Shown here: positions 21,014 through 61,574 of the stretch, one piece after another
How positions within the stretch are numbered: the stretch's first letter is position 1
How the letters are laid out: every line of letters starts with the position of its first letter
From: Asterias rubens
Taxonomy: Eukaryota
NCBI RefSeq assembly: GCF_902459465.1
Contig: NC_047068.1
Span: 17,980,001 to 18,044,000 of the forward strand
Direction of reading: 5' to 3'
DNA length: 64,000 bases
Program-made: the position numbers and the translations under genes
The notes under the pieces: generated by a model
Told to the model about the DNA's origin: nothing
Database searches by the model: none
The model's input: the letters and a program-made list of their open reading frames with translations, nothing else

Positions 21014-22033
21014 TGTTTCTACCTTCATTAGGTCCCCTATCGACAGAATTTATGTTTTTATTGCCGCCGTAAGCGTTACAGTAATATTGGCGAGACATGT
21101 ACAAACCTTAAAGGAAGTTTGCATCTATTTTTGTCCAGTCAGCCCCATTGACGAGACAAGTGTGACGTAACAATTATTGACGTTTCTATGTGATTGTGCG
21201 ACAGCGCGTTAGCGTTGCTATTGGTAGCGTTGCTATAGATAGTGCATTATGCAGAAGCGGCCATGTTGGTACTCTTTTCACCACCCGACTGACATAAACG
21301 GCCTTAACAAAGGCATATTATATTAACGGTAAATGACTTGACGATTTTTAGCAGTCAGGAATTGCAGTGTTGGTGCGCAATGGAACTGAACAGACAGGCT
21401 GTGTATCACACTATTACCTAGACGAGCTGAAAGCAGAATAGGGCCTCACCACACATCGGCACAAATGAATTGCGATCGTTCAGATGAAAAAGGTGAAGGT
21501 ATTCCTGTCTCAAGAATGGTTGATTTTCACCTGAGATTTTCCTCTTTTTTTTTCAACTGGTCATCATTAATCCTGTAATTAACGCGGTCATCTGGTTGTA
21601 AAAGAGATATCAATCCAGGTTGGACTCTTCCGTTGCAGACACCGACGTTCTACCAGGGACATGTGTATACTGGATACTTCTACCTGTTGCTCTACAAATC
21701 ACTTGTGCAGAATGAAAGTGGGAACAACAATGAGCATTTTGTTTTTTATTTATTGACATATAATCGTCTACGCACGAGAGAAAACTAACGACAATTTTAG
21801 GCAGCAGACCTTTTGAAACTCGTCGTACCTTTTTTTTGTACATCTATACTATTACTAAGGAATTGCAGTGACTCACTGTGCGGCTAAAGAGTTGCAGTTT
21901 GTACTACCAAACACCAAACACTTAAGGAGGCAACTAACATCCTGAACTGTATGCCAGATAAGTATACCCATCGCGTTGGTTAGCAGCACTATTTTGACAA
22001 TCTTGTAAAACGACTTTAGAGTCTACGTGCAAT

Positions 22034-23866
22034 ATGGGAGGACAAGGGGGACGCAGGGGAGGTGGGAGACGCCGGGCTCACCGTACTGGGGCCAGGCATC
22101 GTCATCGGGGTGGTGGAGGTCGAGGCTTGAACATATTTTTCCACGGGGGTGGAGGACCGCATCAAGCCCTCATCCAGCGCCGTCTGGTCTCCATTTTAAT
22201 TAGTTTCGGATTCGGCATTGGGTTGATGCTTTATGGTATAACGGCGGTTCTCATCTACCCAACTTTTCCATGGCAAGGGTTTAGCTTCATTGGTATAGGG
22301 ATTATGCTGATATTGATTTCAGTCGTTGGTATTTGGAAAGTCAAACAGCTTCGCCAACACCAACAACAACATCAGCAAGGGCAAGAAGGAACAGTGCACA
22401 TTCCACCAGGAAACATTGGATCACAAGTAACAACACAACAGCAGCAACACATATGGACAACAGAGCAGAATATGACAGCAGCCCCACCTTACGGTGCAGG
22501 ACAAGAACCCCCACCTGGGTATGCAGCAACAGTGGGTCCGATGGGACACTCTCAACCACCCTACCCCCAACCAGGAGGTACTGTACCGCCCTACACCCAA
22601 CCAGCTGGACAGCCCTACCCACAACCAGGAGGTCCAGTGCCACCCTACCCACAACCAGGAGGTCCAGTGCCACCCTACCCCCAACCAGGAGGTCCAGTGC
22701 CACCCTATACCCAACCAGGGGGTGTGGCACCTTATCCTGAATACCCAGCACCACCTGGAGTTGTGCAATCCTCACCTCCACAAACCATCGCTAATCAGCC
22801 ACAACTGTATCATGTGCAGCCGTACTCAGCATCAGATGGGTATGTACACGAGTATACATAGACATAGATAAAAACGAAATCGAAAATTTTGTACCCATCA
22901 GTGTTATGATATTAAACAAATCACATTAGATATTAGGCCTGTATTGAAAGGTTTTCGGTAACACCGTAAGATGACTATCTCTGAGTTGGGGTGGTTCTGA
23001 AAACAACCGTTGGTTTCAACTCGATATTTCGATCAGTATGCTCTGATTGTCTTCTGGAGAAAGCTGCCTTCCGTGATCTTTTTCTGGAGAAAGCTTTCTC
23101 CAGAAGACGATCAGAGCATACTGATCGAAACATCGAGTTAAGAAACCAACGGTACTTTTTAGAACCACCTAACTCATTAGAGATAGTCATTACATGGTGT
23201 TACCGCAAACTGTATTCCATATCGTATTTCCACCATGCAAAGTTACAAATCCTACATTAGATATTCATGTGTCATTGTTATAGTGAAAATAATTTCATCC
23301 AGAAATCAGAGATACCAACTTAACTGCAACCCTTTTAAAAGAGGAATGTCGGAAAATTCACCACTTCAAACACATGAAATGGCCGGGGAACACTTATGTT
23401 CTGAATAAGCAGGACACGGGTGTAATTTTAAGTGAATGAAAGCGTACAATTTGACTAAACTCTTGTTTATTTACGGAAAATGTTCCGAATGTATAAGCTT
23501 TTATTAATTTATACAAAAGTCCTAGGTTTAAAGAAGAAAAAGGGGGAAACTAAAATAATTCTGGCAAACGAAATCTACTGTTAAAATGCTACTCTGTTAT
23601 AGTTTTATCAAAGTTAGCCTAACATTTAAAGTGGTTAGAGCGAGGTTGTACAACCTTTTGTGGCACTGATTTATTTGTATGTCTTTTTCCTGTGTTGTTA
23701 TCCTTAAATTGACGACATCATTTTCCTTTCTCCACCATACAGAAACACACAGGCACCCTATCCACCCGGCGACCCTTCCCAGGGACCAGCACCAATTAAC
23801 CCACCAGTGACGGAACCACCGCCACCATCTTACGAAGTGATTGTTATGAATGAGCAGAATAAGTGA
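22034..23866 (+). CDS. Unnamed 2-TM membrane protein with Gly/Arg-rich N-terminus and Pro/Tyr-rich PPxY tail (paralog 1), 309 aa
   Basis: Exon 1 22034-22839 ends gg|gtatgt. Exon 2 23743-23866 follows catacag| in phase 2 and encodes ...EPPPPSYEVIVMNEQNK*. Two hydrophobic segments (LVSILISFGFGIGLMLYGITAVLIY; FSFIGIGIMLILISVVGIW) and 30-nt PYPQPGGPVP repeats. Confidence 0.85.
22934..23256. mobile_element. Foldback element with about 110-bp inverted arms, in intron of paralog 1
   Basis: Arms 22956-23064 and 23093-23205 are near-complementary. A half copy lies at 61434-61574. Confidence 0.8.
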
Positions 23867-24899
23867 CAATATCATCAACCCCTACTTAGATTAAATATCC
23901 AATCTTAACTGCCTCGATTGTTTTCATTGTTGGACTTTATTATTATGGTAAAACTCAAATTTCAAAGGTGTGAAATATCCACGTTGTTTGAACATTTTAG
24001 TACAAAGCTGAATTCCGCTTGCAGTGGTCTATTTCCCACAAAAACACAATGAATTAATGAAAGTTAAGAAAGGTGTCATTATCCATGTCTTTTGTCTTCT
24101 CTAAAAAAAAATCGGGTCATCTTCAAAATGAATAATTTGTCAGCACCCCTGCGCAATTTATTATTTTCGTAACTCTGTTTTACTCATTTCCCAAAAACTA
24201 CAGCACCTCAGCACGTAATTTTTCAGGGAAGCTTTCTACGTTCATTATTTTCAAACTGTAAGTTTAGTGTAAATAAGTGGACACTGTGTTTTTTGTCCTA
24301 CAAAAGTTACATAGACTCTATAATAATAGTAGCAAAAAAATGTTTTTATTTTTAAAAAATCTAATAACAAGAATATTGATTTATTTGTTCCTTTTTGTAT
24401 GTTTTTTCCACCACACTGCCTTTTAACATTGCTCAACGAGTATTTTGTTTTATTAAAGTAGTGTCTTTATATCTCATGTCATTGCTATCAAAGTGTCATT
24501 TATTTTATTGGTTGTTATTGTTAATTGTTTACAACCACAATGGTTGTCACAATACATGGTATTCTAAGTAGTAACAATGGGTCAGGTTTTTTCTCACACC
24601 CTGCCTCGTTTTCGTATTATTTTGAAGTACCAAGATAAGAGTTGACATTGTCACTAACAAAAAGTCGCTTCCACTTGATATGTAATTTTACCACTATGCA
24701 CAAAGCTAGCTGCACTTTTCCTATCAATGTATCACATACAAACACACAGACTTTGTTTAGAAGTGATTCGAGGTTTGTATATGATCTTCTTCCTCCATGA
24801 TCTACCAGAGTTATCACAACCAAATGGATTTTGTATGGTATATTCGCTGTTATCACACAAGAGCAATAGATAAACTGATAATAAGTACATGGTTACCGT

Positions 24900-25198
24900 A
24901 AGTTTCATAGAGCTGCTTAAGCGGAACATATTGCTTATACCAATTTTTTGCTTAACAGAAATGAGCAAGACACCAGTCACAAAGTATATTGTACATGTGT
25001 GACATGGTAGTTTGTCTGCCAGTTTGGTAAGCATAATTTTGTTGTGGTTAGCTACTTTGTGTTTAAGGAGCCGAATTAACACACACACACAAAATCATCG
25101 GAGACAAATAGTGATTTTTCTTTTGACATCACACTCACTTAGCGACTACGATTGATTTACAGTTCAATAGATCTTAGTTATTTTGTGAAATTGGCCCC
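24900..25198. mobile_element. GGGCCC-family MITE, left end eroded
   Basis: tttcatagagctgcttaagc ... ttttgtgaaattggcccc, matching the ends of 35052-35309. Confidence 0.6.
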
Positions 25199-25750
25199 TT
25201 ATGACGTGTCACCGACCCCCTTTCGATTCATTCATACGTCACGCTGCAACGGGTTTCATTGTGACATTTTACATAACAAAACAGTGTCCTTCAACCCGTA
25301 ATAATGGGCAGTACACATCATTGACCTTCATATCACCAATACAGTAGCCAATATCCAAACGGGTGCTTTACTAGACGAGTCACAGTTGTAATGTGAATTT
25401 CAAGTGCATTCTGATATAGGCTATGGGGTGTCAATTTCATGCACAGTCATCTACATTATCATCATTGGTGTGGTAAAAAACATGGTATCTATGCCTTCTC
25501 TTTAGAAACAACAAAGGCTGGATGTAGTGAAAACATGGCATATTAGATCTTCTTGCTGGGTGTGTCAGTACTGTGGAATGAGTTAACTGAACTGTTTCTT
25601 GGTGTACAGATGCATGTAGGGCACTCATGACATCCATGTTAACTGCTTCAGTTTAATTCATCAATCAGTTTTGTTCTCGCCGTAGTGTGCGACCGTCTTT
25701 ATAAACGAGCTCACTAGTGCATTGGACTTAATGTGGGCCTACCCGTCGGA

Positions 25751-25758
25751 TATATAAA
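25751..25758 (+). promoter_or_regulatory. Candidate TATA box of paralog 2
   Basis: TATATAAA about 160 nt upstream of ATG 25915, in a CpG-containing context. Confidence 0.4.
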
Positions 25759-25914
25759 CGTGTCTCTTATATTATTGCTCCGTGAAAATATTGTGTAAAC
25801 ATTGACATACTCGGGTTAAATAACACTACAGGGGAGAGCCGTTTTATTTGGAGAATCCTCTATTACAACAAGAACGTCATCAAAAGGATAACTGTACAGT
25901 TATTGTTTATTGTC

Positions 25915-26981
25915 ATGAGAGACGCAGGAGGACACGAAGGAGGCTCCCCAGATGGTGTCCGTAACCATCACGATGGAAACACTGGCTTTTGCAACTTCCT
26001 CTGTGCCGCCAAGCCTCTCATAAACAGGTTTTCTTGCAGTTTGATATGCTTTGCTGCTGGTTTCGGATTAATAATTTATGGGATAGTGAGCTACATAAGT
26101 CTAGCACATGTGAGTCCCGGTGTAGCTTGGCAGCGTTTTATGTATATCGGCATCGGTGCTTTGACGATAGGAACCGGTGCTCTTGCTTTAGGGAGACTGT
26201 GCTGTCTTTACCGAACGTATCGACGCCATGAGCAGACAACGCCAAATGTTGCCCTACATGGGAACTTGGGCCCACGACAGCCACAAGTATGGATAGCCGG
26301 TGGACAGACGACACCCAACCACCCTTACGGACCTGGGCAACAACATCCCCAACATGGGTGTCCTCCAGTAGGTTCGCAGTATCCTACAGGGGCATACCCT
26401 CAACAACAACCCCATCCCCAAGCAGGGGGTGCGGTGCCGACACCCAACCTACCTTACGGACCTGGACAACAACAGCCCCAATATCCTCCTCCAGCAACAG
26501 TGGGTCCGCAGTATCCTTCAGGGGCGTACCCTCGACAACAACCCTATCCCCAAGCAGGCCTGGGAGTGGTGCCGCTCAATCAGCAAAACACACCTGTACA
26601 GACAGGTGTATCATATGGGTATGTGCATTATAAAGTGTAAAAGTATGGTGTTTGTGCTAAGTATTTAGCAAAATCCTGTTTTGTGCATGTTTTAAAATAT
26701 TATACAGTTTCGCCCACGCCTCCCCACGGCAACAGATATAGCCAAAGTTTGTGTTTGTTTGTTTATTTTTGGTATGTTGTTTGTTTAGTTTGTGTGTACA
26801 ACTATTACTGTAAGTAATGTTGAACATTGATTCAAGCAGTGTCTGTTTTGTGCTTTATAGGTACTCATCACATCCAGGGTACCCGCCCAATGCCCACCAT
26901 GCGCAAGAGCCACCACCTACACCATCATCACCACCTCCTGCTTATGACGATGCAGTTAAAAATGAGCAAAATGAAATATAA
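25915..26981 (+). CDS. Unnamed 2-TM membrane protein with Pro/Tyr/Gln-rich PPxY tail (paralog 2), 274 aa
   Basis: Exon 1 25915-26618 ends gg|gtatgt. Exon 2 26861-26981 follows tttatag| in phase 2 and encodes ...SSPPPAYDDAVKNEQNEI*. The TM region aligns to paralog 1 (FAAGFGLIIYGI / FGFGIGLMLYGI; WQRFMYIGIG / WQGFSFIGIG). Confidence 0.85.
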
Positions 26982-28642
26982 ATCACGTCATTTTACGCCC
27001 CTCTTTATGTACATAGGGAAAGTGCGCCGTTTTAATTACAGAGTAAATTTATTAACTCATGTTTCCCTTGTTTTCAAAAAGCAACACCCAGTCGACAAAC
27101 CGTGAAAGTATGTCATCATCGCTCAAGTTTTACTGGGGAAACAAATGTTTGATTAGAGGGTTTTTATAAGACGCTCGTCACCGCAACAATGGAAAGCAAA
27201 TCTTCCTACAACACTATCGGGGGAACTGAAAACAAACACAGCTTTTGTCTCCTGTTGCAAAAACATTGCGCCCTCTCCTAGTATTTCTTTTGACGACGAT
27301 GTATACCATAGGCCTACTGATTGAAACGTAGAGTTCTTGCACATCTGGTTCTTTTCAAAACCAACACAGCTTATAAAATGATAACATGAACATTAAGTCT
27401 TTATATAGTTTTGATTCCCAGATTACCATGCTAAAAAAACCACATAAAACTTGATCATCTTCCTATACCCCAGGTACTATAGCCTAATGACTGTTATCCC
27501 AAAGACTACATCAACATAACCATGTTCAAAAGAAATATTTTTGAACTATTGTTGTTGTTTGTTCAGTTAAACATTGTCAAGCATTTTCCCACATCCTACA
27601 ATCTGTCTTGGAGAATGTTCTCGAAAGCATTCGCTTATTATTTGCAATTATAGGCAATTCACAAACGAAGAAAACATAGCATTCCTTAGTTGCTATTTAG
27701 CCATATCTACATAGTTCTGTTCAACATGTTTATTTTTTTGTCCTATAACTAAAAATTTATTTGCAATTACGTGTATTGTTATCGTGCTTTGTGACATTGC
27801 CGAAAATAATGTAATTCTTATGATCTCTATTGCTCGTAGATTCGTGTGTGTTTATACACCAAGGCATTACATGTATACATGTACATGTTGCGGATGACAA
27901 GTGTACAATTCCTATAAATTTTCTTTGACAATCAAAGAAATTAGCATACCAATACACGCTCGTTGACATTGTATAACAGATGTTCCAGACAGAGAGTTTA
28001 CATAATATTAAATGAGTGTTAATCCGAAGGCTTTAGTGAATGGCATTGTTTATAACAAAAGGCAACGTTCACATAGTTTGGAGTTCATAAGCACTACCAT
28101 GGAGCTATAAAAAGGAATGCTCATGTGAGACTGGAGGAGTATAGAAACATTTTGCATGTGTCCTAACGCGACACATGTAGAAATCAGAACTTGTACACTC
28201 AATATCTCAAGACTAAAATGAATAATAATATTTTCTTACCGTACCCTCATCATCCAGCAACGAGCTTCATTTTCGTTATGTCAGCCACTTCCAAAGACAA
28301 CAACCAGCACAACCAAAATGTCTCTTGAATAATAATTATTTGACCTGAGCCGTTGTTGCTGCCGTTTCAAGCTGTGGGCTCCTGTCCAGTTTCAGTTCCG
28401 TATGTCTTTGATGCTGTTCACCGATACCTTTTGACACATGGGAGTAACACAATTATTACATTTTATATGGAAGAATAAACAACAATGTTACTAAATAATT
28501 TAAAGGTGAATAAATTATCTTTGTGTGGTAATTTTTTATGTGTCTTACAATAAGCTTGTTGTCACCATAAAATATTTAATTTAAGGAATACATGTAGTTA
28601 GAAACCAGTGTTCACTTGAAGTTGTGTACGCTAATGACCATC

Positions 28643-29978: not shown

Positions 29979-31893
29979 ATGAGTACGCCTAGTGAAGTTT
30001 CAACCCCCGCAGGGGATAATAATGCCAAGGAGTTAAACGATTTCCTCATGAATACAGAAGAGCAACGGCTGGCATCTTTTTCAGACTGGCCGTTTGAGAA
30101 CGACTGCAACTGCATCCCGAGCAAGGTTTGTTATTTTATGATTTTTTGTTTTGAATTCGAATTCATGAATTCTGAATAATTGTGATGTCTGAACTGACCG
30201 CTGTCTGTGATTCTTTTTGTTGACACGTACGACTGTCCGACTGTCATGAGTGTGACTGACTGTAGAATGTATAGTGTACTGAAGTTTATTTTTATTTCAA
30301 ACAACAATTTGTAAACCTCCACATGTGGCACAAGTCATGTATATTGTATTCTGGATTTCTTCTAAGCTGTAGCGATTAGGCTTAAGTTTCAAATGTTATT
30401 GTTTGGGTAACTGTATTGTGTATGGATGCTATTGTATTTAGCGCCATGGATGAGCACTTTCATCCTGTTCATAGATTTGTGTACTTCATAATTTTATTTT
30501 ATTTTATTATTAACTATCTCTATTGATTTATCTTTCTAGATGGCAGCAGCTGGGTTTTACCACAGCCCAACTCCTCAAGAGCCAGACTTGGTTCGATGCT
30601 TTATGTGCTGCAAGGAACTTGACGGATGGGAACCATCAGATGATCCGATGTTAGTATAAAGAATATGTGAAAATCTGAATGTGTCTGACCATTATTTTAA
30701 TTTGTTACTTGTTTATTTATTTATCTATTTATTTAGTTTCTATTTTGTAATGTTTTGTGGAAGGTTAAGATTGTGAATTTGTGTCATATTAAGAGAACTT
30801 AGAGAAGTTGTGTTATAAACAGCAATGGTTGTTGTTAAGCAAATGTAAAACAGGTGGAAGTATAGGGATCTGGACAGGGCTCAAATTTGAGAGGAAAATA
30901 AATCACAAATTGTGTACAAAATTTGATTAACAATCGTAGACCAGATTCAAAATGACTTGAACAAGCTCTGCTTCAACACTCCAGAGAATGACTTGACAGA
31001 TGTTTTATCAGAGTCATTGTTGAAATTGTTTACAAAAATATTACAAAACAATGATTAGGTCTAATGTTAAACATGCTAAAAGGCCCAATGCTAAAAGTAC
31101 TGACATCGGGCCTGTGGTCCAGTGTTAATCTCAAGCCCTGAGATCACTCCACTAAAAGTGACCGACGATAATAAAACATACCTACAGAATCCGCTCTTAA
31201 TATATCTTCATTCTATGCTTTCTTCTTATACAGGGAGGAGCATAAATCCCATGCTCCGAAGTGTGCCTTCATTAACATAAAAAAGGACAAGGATATGACA
31301 ATTGCAGAGTTCTTGAAGTTAGAATCGGCTAGACAGCAAAACAGGGTTGTAAGTACATACAGAAGAAATCTCATTGGGGAGCGGGGCTGCAGTCTGCCAC
31401 ATTTCTTTTAAATTTTAACTGAATTAGATGGCTTTAAGCAAGGAGGCTTGAGGTTTAGGCAGGGCAGCTTTCTTTGTAAAGAGCTGGACACTATGTAAAA
31501 TGTACAATTTTACGTTACAGGTTTTATGGCTTTTGTCTTGCACCCTCAACGAAAGATATTGGCAAAATAGGGAGACCACTTTCAAAAATGGTCGATTGGT
31601 CGGCACCATCAGTTTCCCAAATATAACTTTTGCAGTGTCCGTCGTACCTCAAAATGGGCCAACTGGCTTAATGTGTAGAGCACCAGCACATTAATACAGG
31701 TGTCTCAGGTTCAAATCCTGCTGTTGTAATAGACTTTATTTCTTTGTTTAACCCAGAAGTCTGGAAGTGTCTCATCCCTAGAAATGGTTGTTTTTTGTTG
31801 CAGAAAGGAGGGGTTGAGAGTCGGAAGAAAGAGTTCAGTTACGAAGCACAGAAGACAAGAGAGGAGATTGAGAACATGGCTTGCATGAATTGA
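29979..31893 (+). CDS. BIRC5: Survivin (single-BIR IAP), 153 aa, 4 exons
   Basis: Exons 29979-30125, 30540-30649, 31234-31348, 31804-31893; phases consistent. BIR motif [44 protein letters not shown] with CCHC zinc ligands, then a C-terminal helix. Confidence 0.95.
31658..31745 (+). mobile_element. tRNA-derived SINE head in survivin intron 3
   Basis: tggcttaatgtgtagagcacc (A-box-like) and ggttcaaatcc (B-box, 31708-31718); stems degenerate. Confidence 0.6.
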
Positions 31894-33364
31894 ATGTCTA
31901 CACCTTTGCCATGAGGCGGCCATCTTGCGTTCTCCCATTCAAATCAATGTAACCAAACTGAGGCTGGCAGGAGAAATAGTCTGGTTCCTTTTTGTACATG
32001 TAATGTCAGCATCAATTACTGTATGTGATACAGGGGAAATGACCAAGATGGTGCCAGATAAGTGTCATGGTCAAGGGCTGCAGAATTTAAGTTTATATCT
32101 CAATGGAGTATTTTTTGTGACTCTTATTTTTGAACTATTTGTTGTCTCTTGCAGATTAAAAACTTGTTTGTTTTAACTCTGCCATTTTATATACACATGA
32201 ATCAAGCAAATCTGTTGGTTCTGCCGTGTGTTTTACATTTATTTTAATTGTGTTAATTTTATATTCAGTAAACTAGATTTATTCAAACCCTAATAAATTT
32301 GGTGTAAAAAGTCCCCCCCCCCCCCCATTTAAATATTTATAATTAGCTGGGAGACTGTAGTGGGCAGTTTGTTACTCTGTCATGTATAATTGTTAATTTT
32401 GAGGATGTTTAGGTCACTGTCACTAAACCTAACCCTAACCACACTGTAAGCGATGCATTTTTGTAGGCGAGTTGGCTGTTTGTAGTTAGAAGTTGGCCGA
32501 TACCAAATTTGAAAAAACCAGTGATTTCATTAAAAAAACATCTTTTTGTAAATAAGAAGCGTGTGGTTTGATGATCTTTTGTAGCGTTTGTCATGTTTGC
32601 AATGCATTGTCTCTTTTGTTTAACCTTGTCCTTTTGGTCTTGCCTGTTTTTTCAAAACTAACTACCCAAAACAAACACAAAAAGACATTCTGTGTGATGT
32701 TGAATTATTAAAATTTTATTTACTGTACAGAACTCGGACTGATGTATTACTTGCTTTGAAGTCAGTGAGAGTCATAGTAATTGCTTTCAAAAACTGACGG
32801 CCAAAAGTACTGAGTGCTTTCACTCATGGAAATTACAACCAAACAAAGTTAAATATCAACATGTACTCCTTTCTGTGCCCATACTTGAAGACATAACATA
32901 TAACAATCATCTTGGCTGTAACTGCAGATTGAAGAAACATAAGTATCGTTTTGTTTACATTCCAACTTGAGAGATCGATTAAATTCAACTCTATATAAAA
33001 ATGCCCCAATTCTGATGTACTTTCATTATAGAAAAAGGACTTAATTTACAATAGGCAAAAGCTCAAGTTATGTAAGCTTGAAATCAATCCAGTCTTATAT
33101 CACAGTATACCTACAATGTATATGGTTTGGGTAAATTTGTCTGTGGACAGCCAAACCAAACGGCGCTCCCATAATGTACACCATACCTCAGAGACTGGTA
33201 TTGCCCAAACGCAGGCCTGATAACATATGATAAAAGACACTTCAAAGTACATTTAAAAAGATTGCATACTGTAAGATAGTGGCACTTTCGGAATACACAA
33301 CGTAAATCAGATGTTCCACCTTTGCACTAAAAGAGTTTGTACTGATTTTCTTAGATGATATGTT

Positions 33365-33510
33365 CAAGCCTGGTTTTTCATATGTGAGAGGGCAGGGCAT
33401 CATTATTGGAAAATCTGAAGTCCATTGGAAACCTTTTAAGGGGCACCAAGGCCAAGACCAGGGTAATAAAGGCCATGGACTTTTGCTGTTTCTGTGTAAT
33501 TCCAGGCGTG
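33365..33510 (+). mobile_element. CAGG-ended MITE family C copy
   Basis: caagcctgg...aaggggcaccaaggccaagaccaggg...aattccaggcgtg. Confidence 0.65.
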
Positions 33511-33571
33511 GCACTCCACTCAATATACATGTCAATGTGTTTTTAAATATATAATATTATCTCAAGATCAA

Positions 33572-36500
33572 TTAACTTCTGCCAGATCTAGCCTCATCAA
33601 TTTTCCGTCGGACTCCGGAGCATGTGAGAGTCAGCTCAGCGTGTTGGCGCTTCAAGCTCTCCAGTTTTCCCCTCAGCTGGTCACCTTCATCCTTACGATC
33701 CTCAAAGTCACGTAGTAACGGCGTGTTACCGAGTAGTCCTGATTTCTGTCTGAGCTTTTGGTTATCGATTCTCAGGCTGTCTCTCGCCTTCTTCGTCCTG
33801 GATAGAACGTCTCTTTTCTGCCGAGGAGAAATATTTTTGAATTACTGAGGGTTTTAATTGAAACTGAGGAAAAAATGAGTGATGAGAGCTCTGTGACTTT
33901 AAGGGCCTTGTCATAGGAGGTAAATTTTCCAGCAATCAAGATTGATTAGCAGTTGAGATTGATACACAGTTAAGCCCAACCTTAGCTTTTTGTGAAATAG
34001 GCCCCTGGGCTTATGAATGCTCCCAAAAATAGGAAATAGGAAAAAGTAGTTTGGGACCAATTTGATCCCACGTACATTATTTAATGCGTGAAGGAAATAA
34101 TACTTTGCTTTTGGTCCCAATGTTCAAAGACATGCAATCCTCTTATGCAAATGAGAGGCTGTTGAGTTTTAACCCCTGACCTACCTGAGCAACCAATGAC
34201 TCTACTTCCTTCAGTTTGCCCTTTTGAACCTGGTTCTCGGCCTGTACAAACTGCAGTTTCTCCTTGACGTGGGTCAGCACCTGGACTGTGCTTGTAATCT
34301 TCTTGCGAAGCTTCAGAAGTTCCTAGTTATACACGAACAATAAATACAACATTTAAGTACCATTCATTCACATACATGTGCATGAATATTATAACACAAG
34401 GCAATTTTGTGTGTATAAATGCCCACAAGCCAAGTTTCAAAGCTCTGCTTACCACCCAATTTCGCACTGTCAATCACCATATGACAATTCTCCGCTTACT
34501 GCGCGTATTAGCGAAGCATGTCTAGTAGCTTTGAGTATGCACGCGAGGAAGCGAAAATTCCCTGCTTACCTGTGAAATACGCTTGCATAAATGTGGAATT
34601 CCATCCGTGCTTTCATAAGCGCCAATTTTATGCTTACGGTCCAAAACCATGAAATTGGGCTCTGTTTGTAAGTCATTGTTATTCAACGTTGCTACTTTGA
34701 TGCAGTGATTTCACACTAAACCTACCTCGTTCCTCTCTTCAATCTTCTCATTATACGTCTGGTTCTCAATCTTAAGCTGCTCAAAGTCAATAAGATGCAG
34801 TCCTTCAGCAAGCTCCTCCTTAGCCTTGAGCTGCTGCTCGCGCTTCCTCAGTCGATTCCTCAGCTTAATGTTCTCCAGTCTTACTTGCTTGACCTCCTCC
34901 TCCTTCCGAGCCTCATTCAAGAGATACTGCTCTGTATCCTGTAAAGCATCGAGAAAATAATTTAATTTGTAATCTGATAAACGGGGTAATGGAACCAGGC
35001 CTGGAATTACACAGAGGCCACTGAGGGAATGCCCCTGTTCGTGCTGTGAACAGGGGCCAATTTCATAGAGCTCCTTAGCACAAGTAAAAGCAAGATGCCA
35101 GTCAGAAATGGTACAGCGTCATGGTGCTTTGGCTGGGAAGTTTACAAAAAAACTGCTCAAGTACAAAACAATCCTGCTAACTTGAAAAAGGTTATTAAAA
35201 CCAAAACCCCATATTATGCACCATTTGGAACTGGTAGCCTGCTTATTTTTGCTTAGCAAAAAATTATGAAGGAAAATATTCTGCTTAAGTAGCTCTATCA
35301 AATTGGGCCCAAGGTAAGAAGTTGTAAGAAGTTGTTTGCTCTAGGTCTGCTTGCCAAAAGTGGACGCCAACGAACCTTTGGAGTGATGGCTTTCCCTGTG
35401 CGGCTATTGATAGCGATTTCAGCCGACTGTTGTTTGAGCACGGTGAACTGATTGGTCTCATGCTCCACAGCATCCAGCTTGTCTGTACGACGTTCCTTCA
35501 GGTCCTCCAGCTGGAGGCTCAGGTTCTCACGCTCTTCTTCCTCTTGCTTCCGAAGCTCTTCAAGATTCGCTGTTGGGGAAAAATGCTGAATGGTTTTTAT
35601 GGAAGCAGGGCCGGAATTTGAGAGAAAAAAATACAAGACCACAGGGCTTGTTCCTGAAAATGTTTACTGGACTAAAATTGTTTTTTCAAGACCCAAATTA
35701 TAATGATGGCATAATTTTAAAGTGAGAGATCTCCTGCACTATGCATTTAACTCTTCCATGCACCATTTTAGTGATAAATTGTTCATATGGATCAAAAGTT
35801 GTTTATTTATTTTTTGCTTATGACGACCCCAAAAACACAAGTCGCAAAGGCATCACCAAAGCGTCCTCATTCTAAAAACTGTGTGGTCGTGCAATCTTTG
35901 TTTTTCGTTTGACAACCTTTTTTTAAAAGAATTTTAAACTGGCAACTGTCATCAAAAGCAATGACTTCCAGTGGCTCTTCTCAGAACCGCCACTCCTCCC
36001 ATAAAAAATGTCAACAATTTACTGCTATTGACCCCTTGCTCGCGCGTCACACGCAGTGAATGATCCGTGCTCACCTAAAACTCCTAAAACACACACTTTC
36101 ACTGCATTACGCACATAATAGAGTTATATATAAAAACGTACAGTGAAATTGCCCACCAGTGTGGCGCATTCAAGACTTTTTTTGATGATGACATCAGGTG
36201 AAATGGGTCAATAGGCCCTAGTCCTTTTAATGAATTGCAGTTTCGGCAAAACAGATAACTATTTTTTTTTGCAAGGCTGTTGTCAACCAGGAAGGTTGTA
36301 CACTCACACATATATTTCAGATATCGCTGTTCCTGGTCTGTGACGTTCTTATCCATGTCTTGGCGTTGATCATCAGTCTTCTTTTTTCGGAAGTACTCTG
36401 CCAACTTATGTTGGAGCTGAACGTTCTGGCCATGTAGCTGCTCTCTGTCACTCATACAGGCCTGAGAAAGAAAATAAATTAGTTAGTCATTCAGATACCC

Positions 36501-39500
36501 ACTTTGTATCAGACCTTGAACTTTGTTCTTTATTCGAGGCATAGCCAGGAGCAAAGCAACTTGAGGAAAGTGTAATGTATTGAACCCTATGAAAGTACAA
36601 ACTTCACAATGACTTAAATAAGTGTTGTCATAGAATCACAACTTCTTGATTTGTGCAATTCATAATCATAGACATTAACCCAATGTTTGTATGAGAGAGA
36701 TGTACTTATACCAGCTTGGTTTTTACATCCCCAGCTGGAAGTTTGCAGAGTTCCCTTGAAGGGAAGATCTTCTAAACAAAGAAACAAACAAACAAACCTG
36801 GTACATCTCGAGGAGTTCTTCTCTGGTCATCCATGGTTCCTCCTCATCGTCATACTCTTCCTCCTCTTGGGGGGATTCTACAAATAAACAATTATCAGAA
36901 AAGTACAGTAAATCTACTAGAATTTTACAACATTGGATTTTGAAAGAGTACATGTATATTCATTCCAATTTTTCAGCTGTGAAAAATAACCAATGTCATC
37001 AATTTTAGTTTTAAAGTTAGTAAAAAAAAGTTTAAAAAAAGAATGTTCTCGTCCTCTCCTGAAGACGAGTATACTGTTCGAAATGTCAAGACCAAACCGG
37101 CTCTTCTCAGAGCCAACACTCACACAAAAGCGAATTACACATGGTTGTACCCGCAAGTTTAATATTATTTTATACTTGTTAGGGTTTGTCTCTATTAGAG
37201 CAAGTGTTTAAAAGTTTTGTGCATTTTCTTTATTTTAATCAGTACACAGTCAATGGTTGCAAACCTCCACATGAAGATTTTGTCTGTATGTCACTTTGCA
37301 ACCTTTCAGTTTTCAACAGCTATATCCAAGAGCAAATAACCAAAGACTGTAATCCTCAAAACTTGGCACTCATATCTAAAAACAAACTTGCAAAGCTTCA
37401 AACTGTACATTCATGCAACTTTGAATTTGATGTTACAGAACTTACCCATTCTTTCTGGTGTGCCTGCTTCCAGCTGTTCTGGCTCCCCAGCCGGACTCCC
37501 CTCTCTAGATAATGGTTCAGTCACAGCTACCACAGGAGTCTCTGGTCTCTCCCCCTCTGCGAACGTATCACTCTGTGGAAGAGGGGAGGCTGGTTTCTCT
37601 TGTTCTCCTTCCTCTGGAGGGGCTTGTTCACCTCCTTCTGCATCTTCTCCTCCTTCTTGTTGCTCTTCTGTCTGTGTTGCTGGGGCGGACTCTTTACCCT
37701 CCTCTTCTACTTCTCCTTCAGGCTTCTCCTCCTGTCCATCTGCTTCATCACCTTCTGCTCCTTCTGTAACAGCTGATAGACAAATAACAGAAAATCTAAA
37801 TTTTTGTCCATAAACATTCATTTCAATGGCTTCCACCGGACATTTGTGGTGGCTTTGCTTGCTAAATGTGATTTAAAATACATAAAGACCAGCTAAATAT
37901 CACTTCAAGTGGTCTTGCTGGCTAGTTCAGTGTTGAATATGAAATAGGACTAAGGAAACAGCTAAAGGACTAGTAAAATGACCAGCTAACTGGTCCTGCT
38001 AACCAGTCAAAATCAAACCTTGGTCCAAAACCTTGTTGCAGTAAACAGGCATGAAAGCCGACCATTGGAAAGAGCATCGATTTTATTGAGCATAAGGACT
38101 GACCTAGATTTTTTAGGCCATTTAATTCATTTTTTTTAGATCTAAGAAAATCAGACTGAAGTAGGAAGAACAGTCCATGCCTGAGTAAAGAAAGTCACAT
38201 ATTTTGGCACTGTTGCTCTAACCTTACAAACAAGTTCGAAACAGATGACAAGAAATAAAGGAAGAAGACCCTAAAGAGATGGAGCACAGATCCGGCTAAA
38301 AAACATAATCTAACCGATCACCAACCTTCAGCATCTTCAGGTACATCTCCAGCTGCCTCTCCTTCCCCTTCTTTCTGCTCACCATCACCTCCCTCCCCCT
38401 CCTCACCACCTTCCTCCCCTGTCTCCAGTTTCTCTCCAGGCTCCTCCCCCTTCTCCGCTCCCTCTCCACCCTCGGCTGGATTCTCCGCATCTGGAGCTAC
38501 CTCTCCTTCCACAGCAGGGGCACTTGGCTCTCCATCCCCTGGAGCAGCTTCTTCTGCTGGGGGTGCATCTGTTGATGTTTCCTCTTGTGTCTCAGTAGGT
38601 GCATCAGGCTGAGCAGCATCTTCTGTTGGTGCTGGTGCTTCTTCTTTAGGTTACAAAAAAAGCAGGTTAAGAAAGTATTTAAAGCATTGTATCAAAAAGC
38701 TGAATGTTATTATATAGAGAGTAGATAAAAGCAATCCCCTTTTATAATGTCAAACATCATCTTAAAGGACACCCCTCAAAAGGCAAGGGCATCTATGCAT
38801 TTTCTCATTGGTATAGGGCACCCTAAGAGGAAACTGTAAACTTCTACTGGAACATTTCAAGGGCATGGAGTCAATCATTGTCTCTGAAGTATCGAGCCTG
38901 ACCCCTTTTCTATCAGTGCACAAGTTGTTACTCTTTAAAATATGTTGTTTTGAGTTGTAAATCTGGTTTCTAGCAGGGTTTTATCCATGATATGAAAAAG
39001 GGTGTCAAAAGGCTGGCCCAGGATCCTACACTGACATTGTCTCATGACAAAATCAAGTATTTGTACTATGGCCAACCTGTAGCAGCCTCTTCTCCAGCAG
39101 TTGGTTCAACCTCTGCAGCTCCCTCTGCTGATGGGGCTGTTTCTCCCTCAGCTGCTGGTGCAGCCTCAGTTTCAGCAGCTTCTGGTGCTGGAGTCTAGGT
39201 AGAAATAAAACGACAAACAAGGCAACAGTTAATTTCAAAGTCAGCCAACCACACAGACACTCAGTCAGTGAGGACTGAGGGGAATCTAAACAATCACGCA
39301 TTTTTTATTTATTAAAGGGAAGGTAGTACACGTTTGATAGTTGTCATAGACCAGGGTATTTGCATGACTTGGTTGTATTTACTATTAATAATTAAATTAA
39401 GTTTATTTTGAAACCACTTACAAATAATAGCATATTAATTACTGATAAGGATTTCCACCGATAGTGATTACTGATAGTAACAAGTGGTTTCAAAATTAAC

Positions 39501-39931
39501 TTAATTTAATGATCATTTAAATGGTCTGGACAATTTAGATTTAGAATACATGACTTAGCCTACTACATTAACAACATGAAAGTAAAATCTTTAAATGATT
39601 GAAATATGTATGAAAAAACAACACAAAACCATCAATAGAGCTTGTCTCGAAGTGACAACTAACACGCTAACATTCATCACCACCTGATCAGACATAACAT
39701 CTAAAAAATACAAAATGTTGTTTATTTTTTTTAATTGAATTGAAGGACTTAGTAACCATTGTTGTTTATCATTATGGTCACATTCAATGCATAAGGTATA
39801 AAAACAACACTTGGAAATGATAAAAAAAAACGCAGGTCTTTCAAAGTTACAGTGTGATATCAATTCGATACATTTTACAAAACAACTCTGACAAGTTGAC
39901 TAAATTTATTTACCTCTTCTGCATCGGCCAT
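33572..39931 (-). CDS. CCDC96: Coiled-coil domain-containing protein 96 (CFAP184), 601 aa, 10 coding exons
   Basis: Exons 39931-39914, 39194-39077, 38643-38326, 37772-37446, 36877-36798, 36461-36308, 35569-35376, 34938-34726, 34322-34185, 33817-33572; phases consistent, 1806 nt. Acidic N-terminus plus the signature LHLIDFEQLKIENQTYNEKIEERNEEL. Confidence 0.93.
34410..34644. mobile_element. GGGCCC-family MITE in CCDC96 intron
   Basis: gccaagtttcaaagctctgcttacc ... ccatgaaattgggctctg; internal similarity to 1854-2030. Confidence 0.65.
35052..35309. mobile_element. GGGCCC-family MITE, complete
   Basis: About 25-bp imperfect TIR ggggccaatttcatagagctccttag / cttaagtagctctatcaaattgggccc. It abuts a truncated family C copy starting at 34996. 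Confidence 0.8.
38745..38900 (+). mobile_element. CAGG-ended MITE family C copy
   Basis: ggcaagggc..agggcaccctaagaggaaactgtaaacttctactggaacatttcaagggc..gaagtatcgagcctg matches 42253-42428. Confidence 0.7.
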
Positions 39932-40233
39932 GTTGTTTTTACGTCGTCTCCTTGGAGTTTTAAAGTCAGTGCCATACCCTGACTTAGCTATACAAACACT
40001 CACATAACATTTGCGGCACCAGTCTACGTATTTCAACCTCGTGCTGAGTTAACACTTTTTAACGTTTAGAGTAATAGTGTTAACCTGAATACGAGGTTGA
40101 AGCTGTACCCGCGAAATTTTAAGCAAAATTGGCGCAAAAACAAAAAACGAACACAGCAGTTCATTCGTTGTTGTGTGACTGGAACAGCTGGCTGTGTAAG
40201 ACCAGAACTTGAAAAATCTTCTAACAACAAAAC
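39932..40233. promoter_or_regulatory. Bidirectional promoter region CCDC96/TK1 with E2F-type sites
   Basis: The two start codons are 302 nt apart and divergent. TTTCGCGG on the minus strand (40109-40116) and TTGGCGC (40129-40135). Confidence 0.7.
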
Positions 40234-43200
40234 ATGGATAGAAGACGACTGTCAAATGATATTTCTTCAAGCCATAAAACGGGTCAAATCCAGGTAAGCT
40301 TATCCATTGTATTATAAAAACTAAAATAGAAAGAAAAATGAAACTGATGAATGATTGAAAATGAAAGAAAGAAGAATTGCACACACACTTACTGACACAC
40401 AGTGTCAGTCAGCAGGACAGTGGTCAGTGCACACTGACAATGGACACAGCCATGATGGGAAAGTTATCCAAATTTGTATTAATTATTATTATATTAATTA
40501 GTTAATTCTGAAGAAAGTAAATTATATAAAGAAAAGAAAACTTGGGTGTCAGAACCCCATAGCTCATCGCCATCGTCGGTGATGAAATTTTGTAACCCCC
40601 CATGTCATCCAATCCATCCTAAAATTGTAAAGATCATCACATTCAGTTCACTGTGCGGTGGCATGGATGATGGGGGGAAGAACTGATCATGCCCATCAAT
40701 CCATCATCAATGGTGCCAAATAAGGGGACGGAGTCCAGCCTATTTGCACGATTTAAATTGGATTTTTACCATACACTGACTCGGGCAATTTATTCCTCCA
40801 TGCTCAGGCACACACTACCAATACCATTACCAATGCACTACAGTCTTTTTTACAGAGTAGGTAGGGTAGGTCCTCGGCTCAGTGCTGCTTGCAAAATCAG
40901 TGATACTGATTATAGTTTGTTTATCAGATTTTGCAAGCAGCACTGAGGACCTACTCTATCAAAAGCCCCTTTCACACGAGAGCAATTTAGCAAGGGTCCC
41001 TTGCTAAATTGTAGCATGGTTGTAAGCATTTACAAAATGCACCTTGTGTGAAAGGAAAATAATTTTTGGAGTGTCCGGGGTCCCTTGTCAAATCTTGTCC
41101 AACATTGCTACATTTTGTCGGAGGTCCGGACCTACGACAAAATCTTACACTAACGGAAGTTTTGACCAAGGACGTGGGCTACATCATCGTGTGAAAGGAA
41201 TCCTTGTTTATTGAACGACGTCCTAGGTGAAAATGCCCATACAGTGCATGCTATTGTGGGTACTATCTTGTCCAATCAAGGTGATCAGGATTACCAATTC
41301 GTCATATCACTCTCATGTCACACAAGGGTTGTTAGTTTTTTAACTTTGCAGTGGGAAAGCTCACAAAATCAGTCAAACACGGTGATAACAAATAAACAAT
41401 CCACGCTCGTAAATTTTGTTGCAAGGGATCCTGGCTACATTTTGGCCGTGTGAAAAGGGCTAAAGTAAGCTTAAATGTATATATAACATTACTCATTAAT
41501 TTTGTGTTTTATGGCAAAATACTTTTAAAATTAGTTTTAAACCACTTTTCATTTTCTTGCAGGTGATCTTTGGACCAATGTTCTCAGGGAAAACGTTAGT
41601 ATTTGGGTTTTTTTTTCGTTTATACCACAATTTCCTTCAAGTTTATACTTCAATTCAAACTGTTACAAATGGTAAATTTGTACATAAATTAAGATTTTGT
41701 GCAGAATATTTTGCATTCTGTACATGTGTTTCATTTTTTTAAGGTCCTTTGGAAAAAGCCAACTCTGTGCCATCCCATTACTATTCAAAATCTTGTTTAC
41801 TTTTAAGTAAACTCTGATTTTGAAATAATCTTCTCGATCTAGATCTAAATAAACCCATCACTGTCACCAATCTGGTTTAATTATTTGTATTATTTTAACT
41901 TATCAGAACCGAGCTTATACGACGCATCAAACGCTATGAAATCGCAAATTATTCCTGTCTCCTCATCAAATACGCCAAGGACGATCGATATGACAAAGAT
42001 GGCGTGGCCACACACGACAGGTAAAATGTTTTTAAAGTTTATTTTGTCTAGGTTTCTTAGACAACTACTGCTTTCTCCTGTCTTTTTGTTTGCTTACGTG
42101 TTTTAAAGACAGTGGACACTATTGGTAATTGTCAAAGACAAGTCTTCTCACTCAGTGTATCTCAACATATACATAAATAACAAACCTGTGAAAATTTGAG
42201 CTCAATCGGAGGTCGAAGTTGCGAGATAATAATGAAAGAAAAAACACCCTTGCAGGGCTGTTTGCTTCGTTTTTGAAAGGGCAAGGGCACCAAGGCAATT
42301 TTCTCTTTGGCAAGGGCACCCTATGAGGAAATTGTAAATTTCTACTGGAGCATTTCATGGGCACCAAGGCAATGGCAAGGGGCAACGGAGGCAATCGCCT
42401 TCGTTGCCTCCGTGAAGTATCAGGCCTGCCCTTGTCACACGGAGTTGTGTGGTTTCAGATGCTTGATTTCGAGACCTCAAGTTCTAAATCGGAGGTCTTG
42501 AAATCAAATTCGTGGAAAATTACTTCTTTCTCGAAAACTACTCCACTTCAGAGGGAGCCGTTTCTCACAATGATTTATACTACCAACCTCTCGCCATTAC
42601 TCGTTACCAAGTAAGGTTTCGTGCTAATAATTATTTTGAGTAGTTACCAATATAAAGTCCACTGCCTTTTAAGTCCTTTTTTTTCTTATATTTTCATTTT
42701 CCAATATCAGTCTTTGATTTTCAGTGTTATACATTCCATATTTTGATCATTTTATTTCAGACAAGTTACTAAAGCAGTGGCAACAGAAATGCTGTACAGT
42801 CTTGCTGACATGACAGAGAAACATGATGTCATAGGCATTGATGAGGGTCAATTTGTAAGTACAGGCCAAATTAATTTCCTGATTTTCGAAACTAATTTTT
42901 GTACCATCACCTCTCGGCGATATTGAATTGCATCAAACTTTCTATGCTTCAGAAAAGTGGTGGCATCTTGCTTTCAATCTGTATCATTTCGCAAATTATT
43001 TTAAAGCTAATACCAGCCGACAAAACTACTTCAGCCTCTGCCATTTATGAACCAACTCTTTTCCATATTTCATTGTAATATCTATAATGCAGATACCACC
43101 TTTATTGTTTAGTAATTCATAGTTTCATACTGACTATTATTTGTCCTCACTACTTTACACTTATTGGTTCATAGCCACACCATCGTTTGTCAATTAGTTA

Positions 43201-61433: not shown

Positions 61434-61574
61434 ACGATCAGAGCATACTGTTTGAAACATCAAGTTAAAACCAACGGTTCAAGTTTTTCAGAACCACTCC
61501 AACTCAGAGATTATCATTATGGTTTTACCAAACCTTCGTATTTCCACCATGCAAAGTTTCAATTCTAAAGCCTA
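61434..61574. mobile_element. Half copy of the foldback element at 22934-23256
   Basis: acgatcagagcatactg..gaaacatc.agtt..aaccaacgg..cagaaccac..aactc..agagat..cgtatttccaccatgcaaagtt. Confidence 0.8.

What the first reader, a model, noticed from the sequence alone, without database searches (positions are those of the whole stretch)
22034..26981. Tandem pair of unnamed 2-TM proteins with low-complexity PPxY tails: candidate new Nedd4-adaptor family
Seen: two adjacent same-strand genes with identical architecture (one large exon, a phase-2 intron, a 121-124 nt last exon). Both have alignable twin TM helices with a very short loop containing WQxF, then long P/Y/Q/G tails ending in PPSY or PPAY plus a shared NEQN motif. 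I recognise no named family. Established: PPxY motifs bind WW domains of Nedd4-family E3 ligases, and small PY membrane proteins (NDFIP, LAPTM, PMEPA1, LITAF) act as ubiquitin/endolysosomal adaptors. Inference: a lineage-specific, fast-diverging adaptor family with both termini in the cytosol.
Basis: partly seen in the sequence, partly recalled or inferred. Interest (0 to 1): 0.75.

Follow-up and report, generated by a model that had tools for sequence, protein, structure and literature searches.

The report
Sea-star two-helix membrane proteins, PPxY tails
Two neighbouring, transcribed sea-star genes encode small membrane proteins (two membrane helices plus a long floppy proline/tyrosine-rich tail ending in a conserved PPxY signal) that belong to no known family and seem confined to sea stars; they may recruit ubiquitin ligases, but that is untested.

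Summary
Gene 1 (22034-22839 + 23743-23866, 309 aa) and gene 2 (25915-26618 + 26861-26981, 274 aa) are same-strand paralogs. Each has a GT-AG phase-2 intron at the same aligned Gly codon. RNA contigs from two species span both splice junctions. The window is Asterias rubens. RefSeq annotates the same 309 and 274 aa products there and orthologous 313 and 274 aa products in A. amurensis. Gene 2 carries the automatic name "calcium-binding protein P-like", but no calcium-binding domain was found. Each protein has a basic N-terminus, a Gly-rich two-helix hairpin with an uncharged short loop, and a disordered P/Q/G/Y tail built by independent internal repeats. Each ends in a shared PPPxY[DE]..V.NEQN motif. 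Charge distribution puts both termini in the cytosol. Pfam finds nothing. An exhaustive HMMER search of 1.84 billion representatives found only the Asterias ortholog and one 241-aa gene-1-like protein of unknown source. Lineage restriction and fast divergence (dN/dS 0.33 and 0.45) are therefore supported. The Nedd4-adaptor reading is plausible, with yeast Sna3p as the closest analogue, but unproven. PPxY is expected by chance in such tails, and only its conserved position argues for function. Interest is modest.

The parts
22034..22839 (+). Gene 1, coding part of the large exon (residues 1-268 plus 2 nt of Gly269). It encodes an Arg/Gly/His-rich N-terminus, the TM hairpin and the P/Q/G/Y tail.
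   Evidence: ORF and hand-checked splice donor. In-frame stops lie upstream of the ATG. RNA contigs X1 rec1/rec2 and X3 rec15 cover it. RefSeq has a 309-aa product at the same span.
22184..22345 (+). Gene 1 TM hairpin (about residues 51-104): TM1 with GFGIGLMLYG, an uncharged loop YPTFPWQGF, and TM2 with IGIG.
   Evidence: Hydropathy, alignment to gene 2, charge counts 12 K/R before, 0 in the loop, 3 after.
22555..22723 (+). Gene 1 tail: 30-bp (10-aa, PPYPQPGGPV-type) tandem array, 5.8 copies. Copy content differs in A. amurensis.
   Evidence: TRF; ortholog alignment with indels.
22840..23742 (+). Gene 1 intron (GT..AG, phase 2). It contains a palindromic MITE-like repeat at 22951-23210.
23743..23866 (+). 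Gene 1 last coding exon (124 nt including the stop). PPSY lies at 23822-23833 and NEQN at 23849-23860. The 3' UTR runs on to at least 24204.
   Evidence: (X1 rec2 reaches 24204).
25915..26618 (+). Gene 2, coding part of the large exon (residues 1-234 plus 2 nt of Gly235). The 5' UTR is contiguous back to about 25386.
   Evidence: The model is identical to XP_033631171.1 (P0004).
26026..26208 (+). Gene 2 TM hairpin (about residues 38-98): TM1 with AAGFGLIIYG, loop SPGVAWQRF, Gly/Ala-rich TM2, followed by a juxtamembrane CC and four Arg.
   Evidence: AlphaFold helices 38-64 and 71-107 in the 93%-identical ortholog.
26309..26558 (+). Gene 2 tail: 132-bp (44-aa) unit duplicated 1.9 times at 83% match. 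This repeat differs from the one in gene 1.
   Evidence: TRF.
26619..26860 (+). Gene 2 intron (GT..AG, phase 2).
26861..26981 (+). Gene 2 last coding exon (121 nt including the stop). PPAY lies at 26934-26945 and NEQN at 26961-26972. The 3' UTR extends beyond 27100.
   Evidence: (X1 rec6 continues 1343 nt past 27100).

Best explanation
These are two real, expressed, tandemly duplicated genes of Asterias rubens. They belong to a small, fast-evolving, apparently sea-star-restricted family of hairpin membrane proteins. Each protein inserts as a Gly-rich two-helix hairpin with a very short uncharged lumenal or extracellular loop, so the basic N-terminus and the 170-200-residue disordered P/Q/G/Y tail face the cytosol (inferred from charge distribution). 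The most likely mechanism, which is inferred and not shown, is that the conserved C-terminal PPPxY[DE] motif is a class-I WW-domain ligand. It would dock a Nedd4-family HECT ligase on the membrane. The protein itself, and possibly partner membrane proteins held by the TM hairpin, would then be ubiquitinated and sorted into the endolysosomal/MVB pathway, as with yeast Sna3p or animal NDFIP. Shown: gene structure, transcription, splicing, paralogy, orthology, absence of a known domain, and motif conservation. Inferred: topology, WW binding and the adaptor role.
For: Gene models and splice junctions are confirmed by RNA contigs in two species. RefSeq carries identical models in A. rubens (309 and 274 aa) and orthologous ones in A. 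amurensis (313 and 274 aa). Paralogy is shown by E 8.5e-9 and 1.9e-5 and by the same intron phase and position. Topology: K/R counts are 12/0/3 (gene 1) and 4/1/4 (gene 2) for N-terminus/loop/post-TM2. AlphaFold gives a helical hairpin at pLDDT 75-81 and a tail below 50. Motif: PP.Y sits 10-11 residues from the C-terminus in both paralogs, although their tails were rebuilt by different internal repeats. Between species only the x residue changes (PPAY to PPSY), and NEQN is kept. The chance of a PPxY in the last 16 residues is about 0.05 per shuffled tail. Purifying selection is strongest on the hairpin (dN/dS 0.10 and 0.25). Sna3p is a precedent: two TM domains, a cytosolic C-terminal PPAY, binding to Rsp5 WW3, and PY-dependent MVB sorting (PMC2171029).
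Against: No experiment or interaction data exist. The tails are so Pro/Tyr-rich that at least one PPxY arises in 40-60% of shuffles. dN/dS of the last exon is not low (0.64 and 1.24, on only 2 and 4 substitutions). The last exon of the third homolog, P0003, could not be read, so motif conservation rests on one duplication and two closely related species. PPxY also binds non-ligase WW proteins such as YAP, WWOX and MAGI. The shared NEQN motif is unexplained by this model.
Confidence: 0.4

Rival explanations
1. The genes are fast-evolving orphan membrane proteins whose PPxY is a by-product of tail composition. They are real, but the tail acts only as a disordered, low-complexity cytosolic spacer or condensate-prone region, and no WW-domain partner exists.
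For: Shuffled tails give a mean of 0.5-0.95 PPxY, with at least one in 39-63% of shuffles. The tails are built by recent, independent tandem duplications. dN/dS is 0.39-0.65 in the tails and 0.64-1.24 in the last exon. Exon divergence is about equal to intron divergence.
Against: The PP.Y and NEQN positions align between paralogs that share only about 30-40% identity, and they survive in both species while neighbouring residues change. The short last exon aligns at E 1.9e-5, unlike the rest of the tail.
Confidence: 0.25
2. They are small two-TM auxiliary subunits that regulate a channel or transporter through the TM hairpin, as vertebrate TMEM174 (NaPi2a), PIRT and TMEM100 do. The tail would be a regulatory or scaffolding region, and the PY motif would be secondary.
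For: The language-model feature search repeatedly lists TMEM174, TMEM100, PIRT, TMEM51/61/139 and TMEM252 clusters (scores 0.6-0.71). The Foldseek top three Swiss-Prot hits are TMEM174 of mouse, rat and human (E 8e-3 to 6e-2). TMEM174 is described with both termini inside the cell (PMC3820833) and as a regulator of a phosphate transporter (PMC9012787). The hairpin is the most constrained part of the proteins.
Against: All these scores lie below the tools' own reliability marks (atlas below 0.8; TM-score about 0.2). None of these Pfam families matched at E up to 10. A two-helix hairpin with a disordered tail is a generic shape.
Confidence: 0.15
3. The tails are Ca2+-dependent docking sites for the penta-EF-hand protein ALG-2 (PDCD6) and ESCRT-associated factors, like the Pro-rich regions of ALIX, annexin A7/A11, PLSCR3 and Scotin/SHISA5.
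For: Gene 1 carries PPYP three times, including PPYPQPGGPVPPYP, which resembles the type-1 ALG-2 motif PPYPXnYP (PMC4346919; PMC5037681, which notes that the spacing may vary and that PYP or PxYP can substitute). Both tails have several PYP or xYP elements. A Shisa5-like cluster appears among the feature hits.
Against: PPYP is absent from gene 2 and from P0003, and the full PPYPx(3-8)YP pattern is absent even from the A. amurensis gene 1 ortholog. It is therefore not a conserved family feature. The spacing is 8 residues rather than the validated 4. Such motifs are also expected from composition.
Confidence: 0.08

Closest known systems
Yeast Sna3p (Pmp3/Sna family), an Rsp5-binding MVB cargo and adaptor
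   Same: It is a small protein with two N-terminal TM domains and a cytosolic C-terminal tail carrying a single PPAY. That motif binds a Nedd4-family ligase and drives endosomal sorting (PMC2171029). Gene 2 ends with the same PPAY tetrapeptide.
   Different: There is no sequence relationship: the Pfam Pmp3 family was not matched. Sna3p is a small protein, whereas here the tails are 170-200 residues of repeat-built low-complexity sequence and a long basic N-terminus is present. Sna3p belongs to fungi and plants, these proteins to sea stars.
NDFIP1/2, LAPTM4/5, PMEPA1 and LITAF (animal PY-motif membrane proteins)
   Same: They share the proposed logic: a membrane anchor plus cytosolic PPxY that recruits Nedd4-type ligases to endosomal or Golgi membranes (established knowledge; LAPTM5 and Nedd4 are cited in PMC2171029).
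   Different: They have other numbers and orders of TM segments: three C-terminal TM in NDFIP, four in LAPTM, one in PMEPA1, and a zinc-ribbon-flanked in-plane hairpin with N-terminal PY motifs in LITAF. None was matched by Pfam. A genuine LITAF-domain gene lies 25 kb downstream in this window and is clearly different.
Vertebrate TMEM174 (also TMEM51/61/139/252, PIRT, TMEM100)
   Same: They share the N-in/C-in two-TM hairpin near the N-terminus followed by a long disordered cytosolic tail and a similar size (243 aa). TMEM174 is the top Foldseek hit and recurs in the feature search.
   Different: No significant sequence similarity was found: no Pfam hit at E up to 10. Structural scores are in the noise (TM 0.2). 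A PY-motif role is not known to me for TMEM174 (own knowledge).
'Calcium-binding protein P' (the RefSeq automatic name of gene 2)
   Same: The only plausible shared feature is a P/Q/G/Y-rich low-complexity composition (inference).
   Different: No EF-hand or any other calcium-binding domain was detected in any family member. The name is most likely a compositional best-hit artefact.

Membership tests
Class-I WW-domain ligands (PY-motif proteins) | A PPxY tetrapeptide in a cytosol-exposed, accessible (disordered) region | tested here: met
   PPSY (gene 1 residue 296) and PPAY (gene 2 residue 260) lie in tails with pLDDT below 50 that are predicted cytosolic. They are conserved in A. amurensis as PPSY and PPSY.
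Class-I WW-domain ligands (PY-motif proteins) | Physical, PY-dependent binding to a WW domain of a Nedd4-family ligase | not testable with these tools
   This needs pull-down, ITC or co-IP with PPxY mutants.
Sna3/Pmp3 family (PF01679) | Sequence match to the Pmp3 two-TM domain | tested here: not met
   No Pfam hit at E up to 10 for six family sequences.
NDFIP family | Three C-terminal TM helices with N-terminal PY motifs, and a Pfam match | tested here: not met
   There are two N-terminal TM helices, the PY is C-terminal, and no Pfam hit was found.
LITAF/SIMPLE-like (PF10601) | A zinc ribbon (paired CxxC knuckles) flanking a hydrophobic hairpin | tested here: not met
   No PF10601 hit for genes 1 or 2, whereas the neighbouring gene's exon 51961-52098 hits it at 1.9e-9.
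TMEM174 (PF15029), TMEM51 (PF15345), TMEM61, TMEM252, TMEM100, PIRT | A significant match to the family profile | tested here: not met
   None was reported at E up to 10. The only signals are sub-threshold feature similarity (0.6-0.71) and Foldseek E 8e-3 with TM 0.2. A profile-profile test was not possible.
Shisa / VOPP1 / WBP1 (single-TM PY proteins) | A signal peptide plus a Cys-rich lumenal domain before the TM | tested here: not met
   The first hydrophobic segment starts at residue 38-51, after a charged N-terminus. The loop is 6-10 residues with no Cys-rich domain, and no Pfam hit was found.
EF-hand calcium-binding proteins (RefSeq name) | An EF-hand or other Ca2+-binding domain | tested here: not met
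   No such Pfam domain was found.

The most novel reading that the evidence does not exclude
A family that arose within sea stars has independently reinvented the Sna3/NDFIP solution. A glycine-zipper TM hairpin would select partner membrane proteins, and a rapidly evolving, repeat-built cytosolic tail would present a fixed C-terminal PPxY-NEQN module that recruits Nedd4-type ligases. This would give echinoderms a lineage-specific control over the surface abundance of receptors or transporters.
Probability: 0.25. Interest if true: 0.45.

Novelty: new variant of a known kind. Interest (0 to 1): 0.3.

Why it matters
If the PPxY tails do bind Nedd4-family ligases, this would be a taxonomically restricted adaptor family with no sequence relationship to the known ones. 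It would be a case of convergent invention of the anchor-plus-PY design. It would also give a handle on ubiquitin-dependent membrane-protein turnover in echinoderms, where such regulators are uncharacterised. Practically, the work corrects a misleading automatic RefSeq name ("calcium-binding protein P-like"). As it stands, this is a well-supported pair of orphan genes carrying a plausible but common short linear motif. That is useful annotation rather than a surprise.

Tried and rejected
1. Pfam scans of exon-1 translations, last exons, the full-length ortholog, its N- and C-terminal parts, P0003 and the A. amurensis gene 1 ortholog gave only noise (DUF7322 0.28, Trp_oprn_chp 0.016, DUF6458 0.029, all far below cut-offs).

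2. Word-indexed homology searches had little reach. Gene 2 found only its own 90% cluster. The gene 1 TM region found nothing, not even the annotated A. amurensis ortholog, so that blank is uninformative. The five-sequence alignment search was saturated by low-complexity words and returned only P0001.

3. The exhaustive HMMER search with the N-terminus plus hairpin profile returned P0001, P0003 and P0002. P0002 is an 899-aa protein with seven repeated Gly-rich TM segments matching only TM2. I rejected it as a compositional or TM match.

4. DNA for the P0003 contig (ENA ERZ26222911) could not be fetched. Its last exon, tandem partner and organism therefore remain unknown.

5. The JGI metagenome scan gave 600 pattern matches, none confirmed.

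6. Structure searches were uninformative. The Swiss-Prot AFDB search gave TMEM174 at E 8e-3 but TM 0.2, and the ESM Atlas shape search gave TM of at most 0.30, which is meaningless. The model itself is low confidence outside the hairpin.

7. Literature searches for TMEM51 with PPxY and for the RefSeq name in Asterias returned nothing relevant.

8. I recalled from memory that human TMEM51 has PSYEEV and PPPQYDEV-like motifs resembling the C-terminal module. It remains a lead only.

9. I considered a derivation of genes 1 and 2 from the neighbouring LITAF-like gene (similar GYPP composition) and rejected it. The domain order is opposite and genes 1 and 2 have no zinc ribbon.
Full report
**1. What is in the sequence**

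Two long + strand ORFs stand out from an AT-rich background. They lie at 22034-22861 and 25903-26640, in windows of about 50-52% GC (22000-22999 and 26000-26499) against 31-42% in most neighbouring windows.

I read the DNA by hand and translated the joined exons. This gives two models:
- Gene 1: ATG 22034, exon end 22839, GTATGT donor at 22840, CAG acceptor ending at 23742, last coding exon 23743-23866 (124 nt), 309 aa.
- Gene 2: ATG 25915, exon end 26618, GTATGT donor at 26619, TAG acceptor ending at 26860, last coding exon 26861-26981 (121 nt), 274 aa.

Both introns interrupt a Gly codon after its second base. The two positions align with each other (...SDG|NTQ... and ...SYG|YSS...). In-frame stops precede both start codons.

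**2. The genes are real**

Assembled RNA contigs of four public runs were laid on 21900-27100.
- One 600-nt contig of run X1 joins 22838 directly to 23742. A 2308-nt contig of X3 makes the same join.
- Contigs of X1 (2213 nt), X3 and X4 join 26617 to 26860.
- These are the predicted junctions within the 1-nt ambiguity of a repeated G. The GT-AG ends fix the + strand.
- Contigs of gene 1 carry 549-682 further nucleotides 5' of 21911. This is an upstream UTR, either contiguous or spliced at the CAG ending at 21897; I could not tell which.
- Gene 2's 5' UTR is contiguous back to about 25386. Its 3' UTR runs more than 1.3 kb beyond 27100.

Runs X3 and X4 belong to a second species. X3's 12-nt insertion after 22069 encodes the RGGN insertion seen in the A. 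amurensis ortholog.

My gene 2 product is identical to XP_033631171.1 of Asterias rubens (P0004). The locus is chromosome LR699098.1 of assembly GCA_902459465.3, where a 309-aa product is annotated exactly at the gene 1 span. A. amurensis has the same tandem pair (313 aa and 274 aa), between a short-chain dehydrogenase gene upstream and a BIR-domain (survivin-type) gene downstream.

**3. Paralogy and conserved parts**

The two proteins align along their length.
- N-terminal 125 residues: E 8.5e-9, 30% identity over 113 aa.
- Last exon: E 1.9e-5, 40% identity over 35 aa.

The conserved islands are:
- a basic N-terminus, extreme in gene 1 with 12 Arg/Lys and no acidic residue in the first 50 residues;
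- TM1 with G.G.GL..YG;
- a short uncharged loop ending in P..WQ.F;
- TM2 with IGIG;
- a mid-tail island, VW(T/I)(T/A)G...PYG.GQ;
- the C-terminal module PPP.Y(D/E)..V.NEQN.

The rest of each tail is P/Q/G/Y-rich (20-26% Pro, about 7% Tyr). The tails were built by different internal duplications: a 30-bp unit in 5.8 copies in gene 1, and a 132-bp unit in 1.9 copies in gene 2. The tails therefore expanded independently after the gene duplication, while the last exon was retained.

**4. Structure and topology**

The AlphaFold model of the 93%-identical A. amurensis ortholog of gene 2 gives two long helices (38-64 and 71-107, pLDDT 75-81) joined by a six-residue loop. The tail has pLDDT below 50.

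Lys/Arg counts for N-terminus, loop and the stretch after TM2 are 12/0/3 in gene 1 and 4/1/4 in gene 2. By the positive-inside rule (established knowledge), both termini face the cytosol. Gene 2 has a juxtamembrane Cys-Cys after TM2, which I infer is a possible palmitoylation site.

**5. Relatives and family assignment**

- Pfam gives no family for any member at E up to 10.
- An exhaustive HMMER search used a profile of the N-terminus plus hairpin against 1.84 billion cluster representatives. It returned three proteins at E of 1e-3 or better.
  - The Asterias gene 2 cluster.
  - P0002, an 899-aa protein with seven Gly-rich TM repeats matching TM2 only. I rejected it as a compositional match.
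  - P0003, 241 aa, E 2.5e-4, matched over profile positions 2-122.
- P0003 is clearly gene-1-like. It starts MGG.GGR, has the His/Arg-rich stretch, the VWTTGQ...PPPYGAG island and ...YQVQP. It shares 43% identity with gene 1's exon 1.
- P0003 ends by reading through into what would be the intron, so it is a one-ORF call on a 19-kb ENA contig of unstated organism. Its DNA could not be fetched. It lacks the W of WQ.F.
- The word-indexed searches and a JGI metagenome scan added nothing. One of them missed a known ortholog, so those blanks carry little weight.
- The language-model feature search and Foldseek point weakly and repeatedly to vertebrate two-TM proteins with long tails: TMEM174, TMEM51/61/139, TMEM252, PIRT and TMEM100. 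Every score is below the tools' own reliability marks (0.6-0.78; E 8e-3 with TM-score 0.2). The ESM Atlas shape search was meaningless.
- The RefSeq name "calcium-binding protein P-like" has no domain support. I attribute it to low-complexity similarity (inference).

**6. Rate of evolution**

I compared A. rubens with A. amurensis.

| Region | Gene 1 | Gene 2 |
|---|---|---|
| Exon nucleotide identity | 97.6-97.9% | 95.9-96.0% |
| Intron nucleotide identity | 96.6% | 95.9% |
| dN/dS, whole gene | 0.33 | 0.45 |
| dN/dS, TM hairpin | 0.10 | 0.25 |
| dN/dS, exon-1 tail | 0.39 | 0.65 |
| dN/dS, last exon | 0.64 | 1.24 |

The last-exon values rest on only 2 and 4 amino-acid changes. Those changes spare PP.Y and NEQN. 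In gene 2 only the x residue changes (PPAY to PPSY). The family evolves fast, the hairpin is its most constrained part, and the C-terminal motif positions are kept.

**7. How it probably works**

A cytosolic, disordered, C-terminal PPxY is the textbook ligand of class-I WW domains such as those of Nedd4/Rsp5 ligases.

The closest described analogue is yeast Sna3p. It has two TM domains and a cytosolic C-terminal PPAY. It binds Rsp5 through WW3, and its sorting to the endosomal/MVB pathway depends on the PY motif (PMC2171029).

I therefore rate a membrane-anchored WW ligand as the most likely mechanism, at confidence 0.4. It would be a Nedd4-type adaptor or a self-sorting cargo, with the Gly-rich hairpin as a possible partner-binding surface.

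The main caveat is statistical. Shuffled tails contain at least one PPxY in 39-63% of trials, and gene 1's second PPxY (PPGY at residue 160) is unremarkable. The argument rests on positional conservation, where the chance is about 0.05 per tail for the last 16 residues, and that conservation is sampled over one duplication and two close species.

Rival readings:
- The motif is a compositional by-product in orphan genes (0.25).
- The proteins are two-TM auxiliary subunits of a TMEM174/PIRT type (0.15).
- The tails are ALG-2/ESCRT docking sites through PPYP...YP-type motifs (0.08). PPYP occurs in gene 1 only, and the full pattern is missing even from its A. amurensis ortholog.

The shared NEQN motif is explained by none of these.

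**8. Verdict**

The statements "no named family", "lineage-specific", "fast-diverging" and "both termini cytosolic" are supported. "Nedd4 adaptor" is a reasonable, testable but unproven inference.

This would be a new, unrelated structural variant of a well-known functional kind. The genes are already annotated, uncharacterised in one species and misnamed in the other. Interest is modest at 0.3.

Noticed in passing
window 49664-53000 (+): This is a LITAF/SIMPLE-like gene. A first coding exon begins MSDPVQPPPPY (a PPPY motif) at 49664. A Q/G/Y/P-rich exon (GYPPxGQP repeats) lies around 51406-51560. An exon at 51961-52098 matches the LITAF-like zinc ribbon (PF10601, E 1.9e-9). A known type of PY-motif membrane protein therefore sits 25 kb downstream of the pair. 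I judged it unrelated to genes 1 and 2.
   Followed up: partly
window 22951-23210 (gene 1 intron); related copy near 61436-61457: A near-perfect palindromic, MITE-like element of about 260 bp has nested inverted arms of 48, 32 and 28 nt at 84-96% complementarity. It is enormously abundant in RNA contigs of both Asterias species (summed word depth 1e4-1e5, with many opposite-strand joints). Other high-copy segments lie at 24162-24335 and 24858-25205.
   Followed up: partly
window 58909-59967 (-): An intronless 352-aa ORF has the look of a rhodopsin-type GPCR: seven hydrophobic segments, a DRY-like motif (VDRY) and NPxxY-like (NPVVY). It was not searched.
   Followed up: no
window 60265-60795 (-): A 176-aa ORF resembles the C-terminal part of a non-LTR retrotransposon reverse transcriptase. 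It was not searched.
   Followed up: no
window about 29979-44760; L001/L002 downstream genes: A BIR-domain (survivin-like, 153 aa) gene and a CCDC113-like gene follow the pair in both Asterias species.
   Followed up: partly
seawater and marine metatranscriptome runs X6, X8, X9: Environmental RNA runs hold 5-8% of the sampled words of this locus. I presume this is Asterias material, such as larvae or shed cells, in seawater samples.
   Followed up: no
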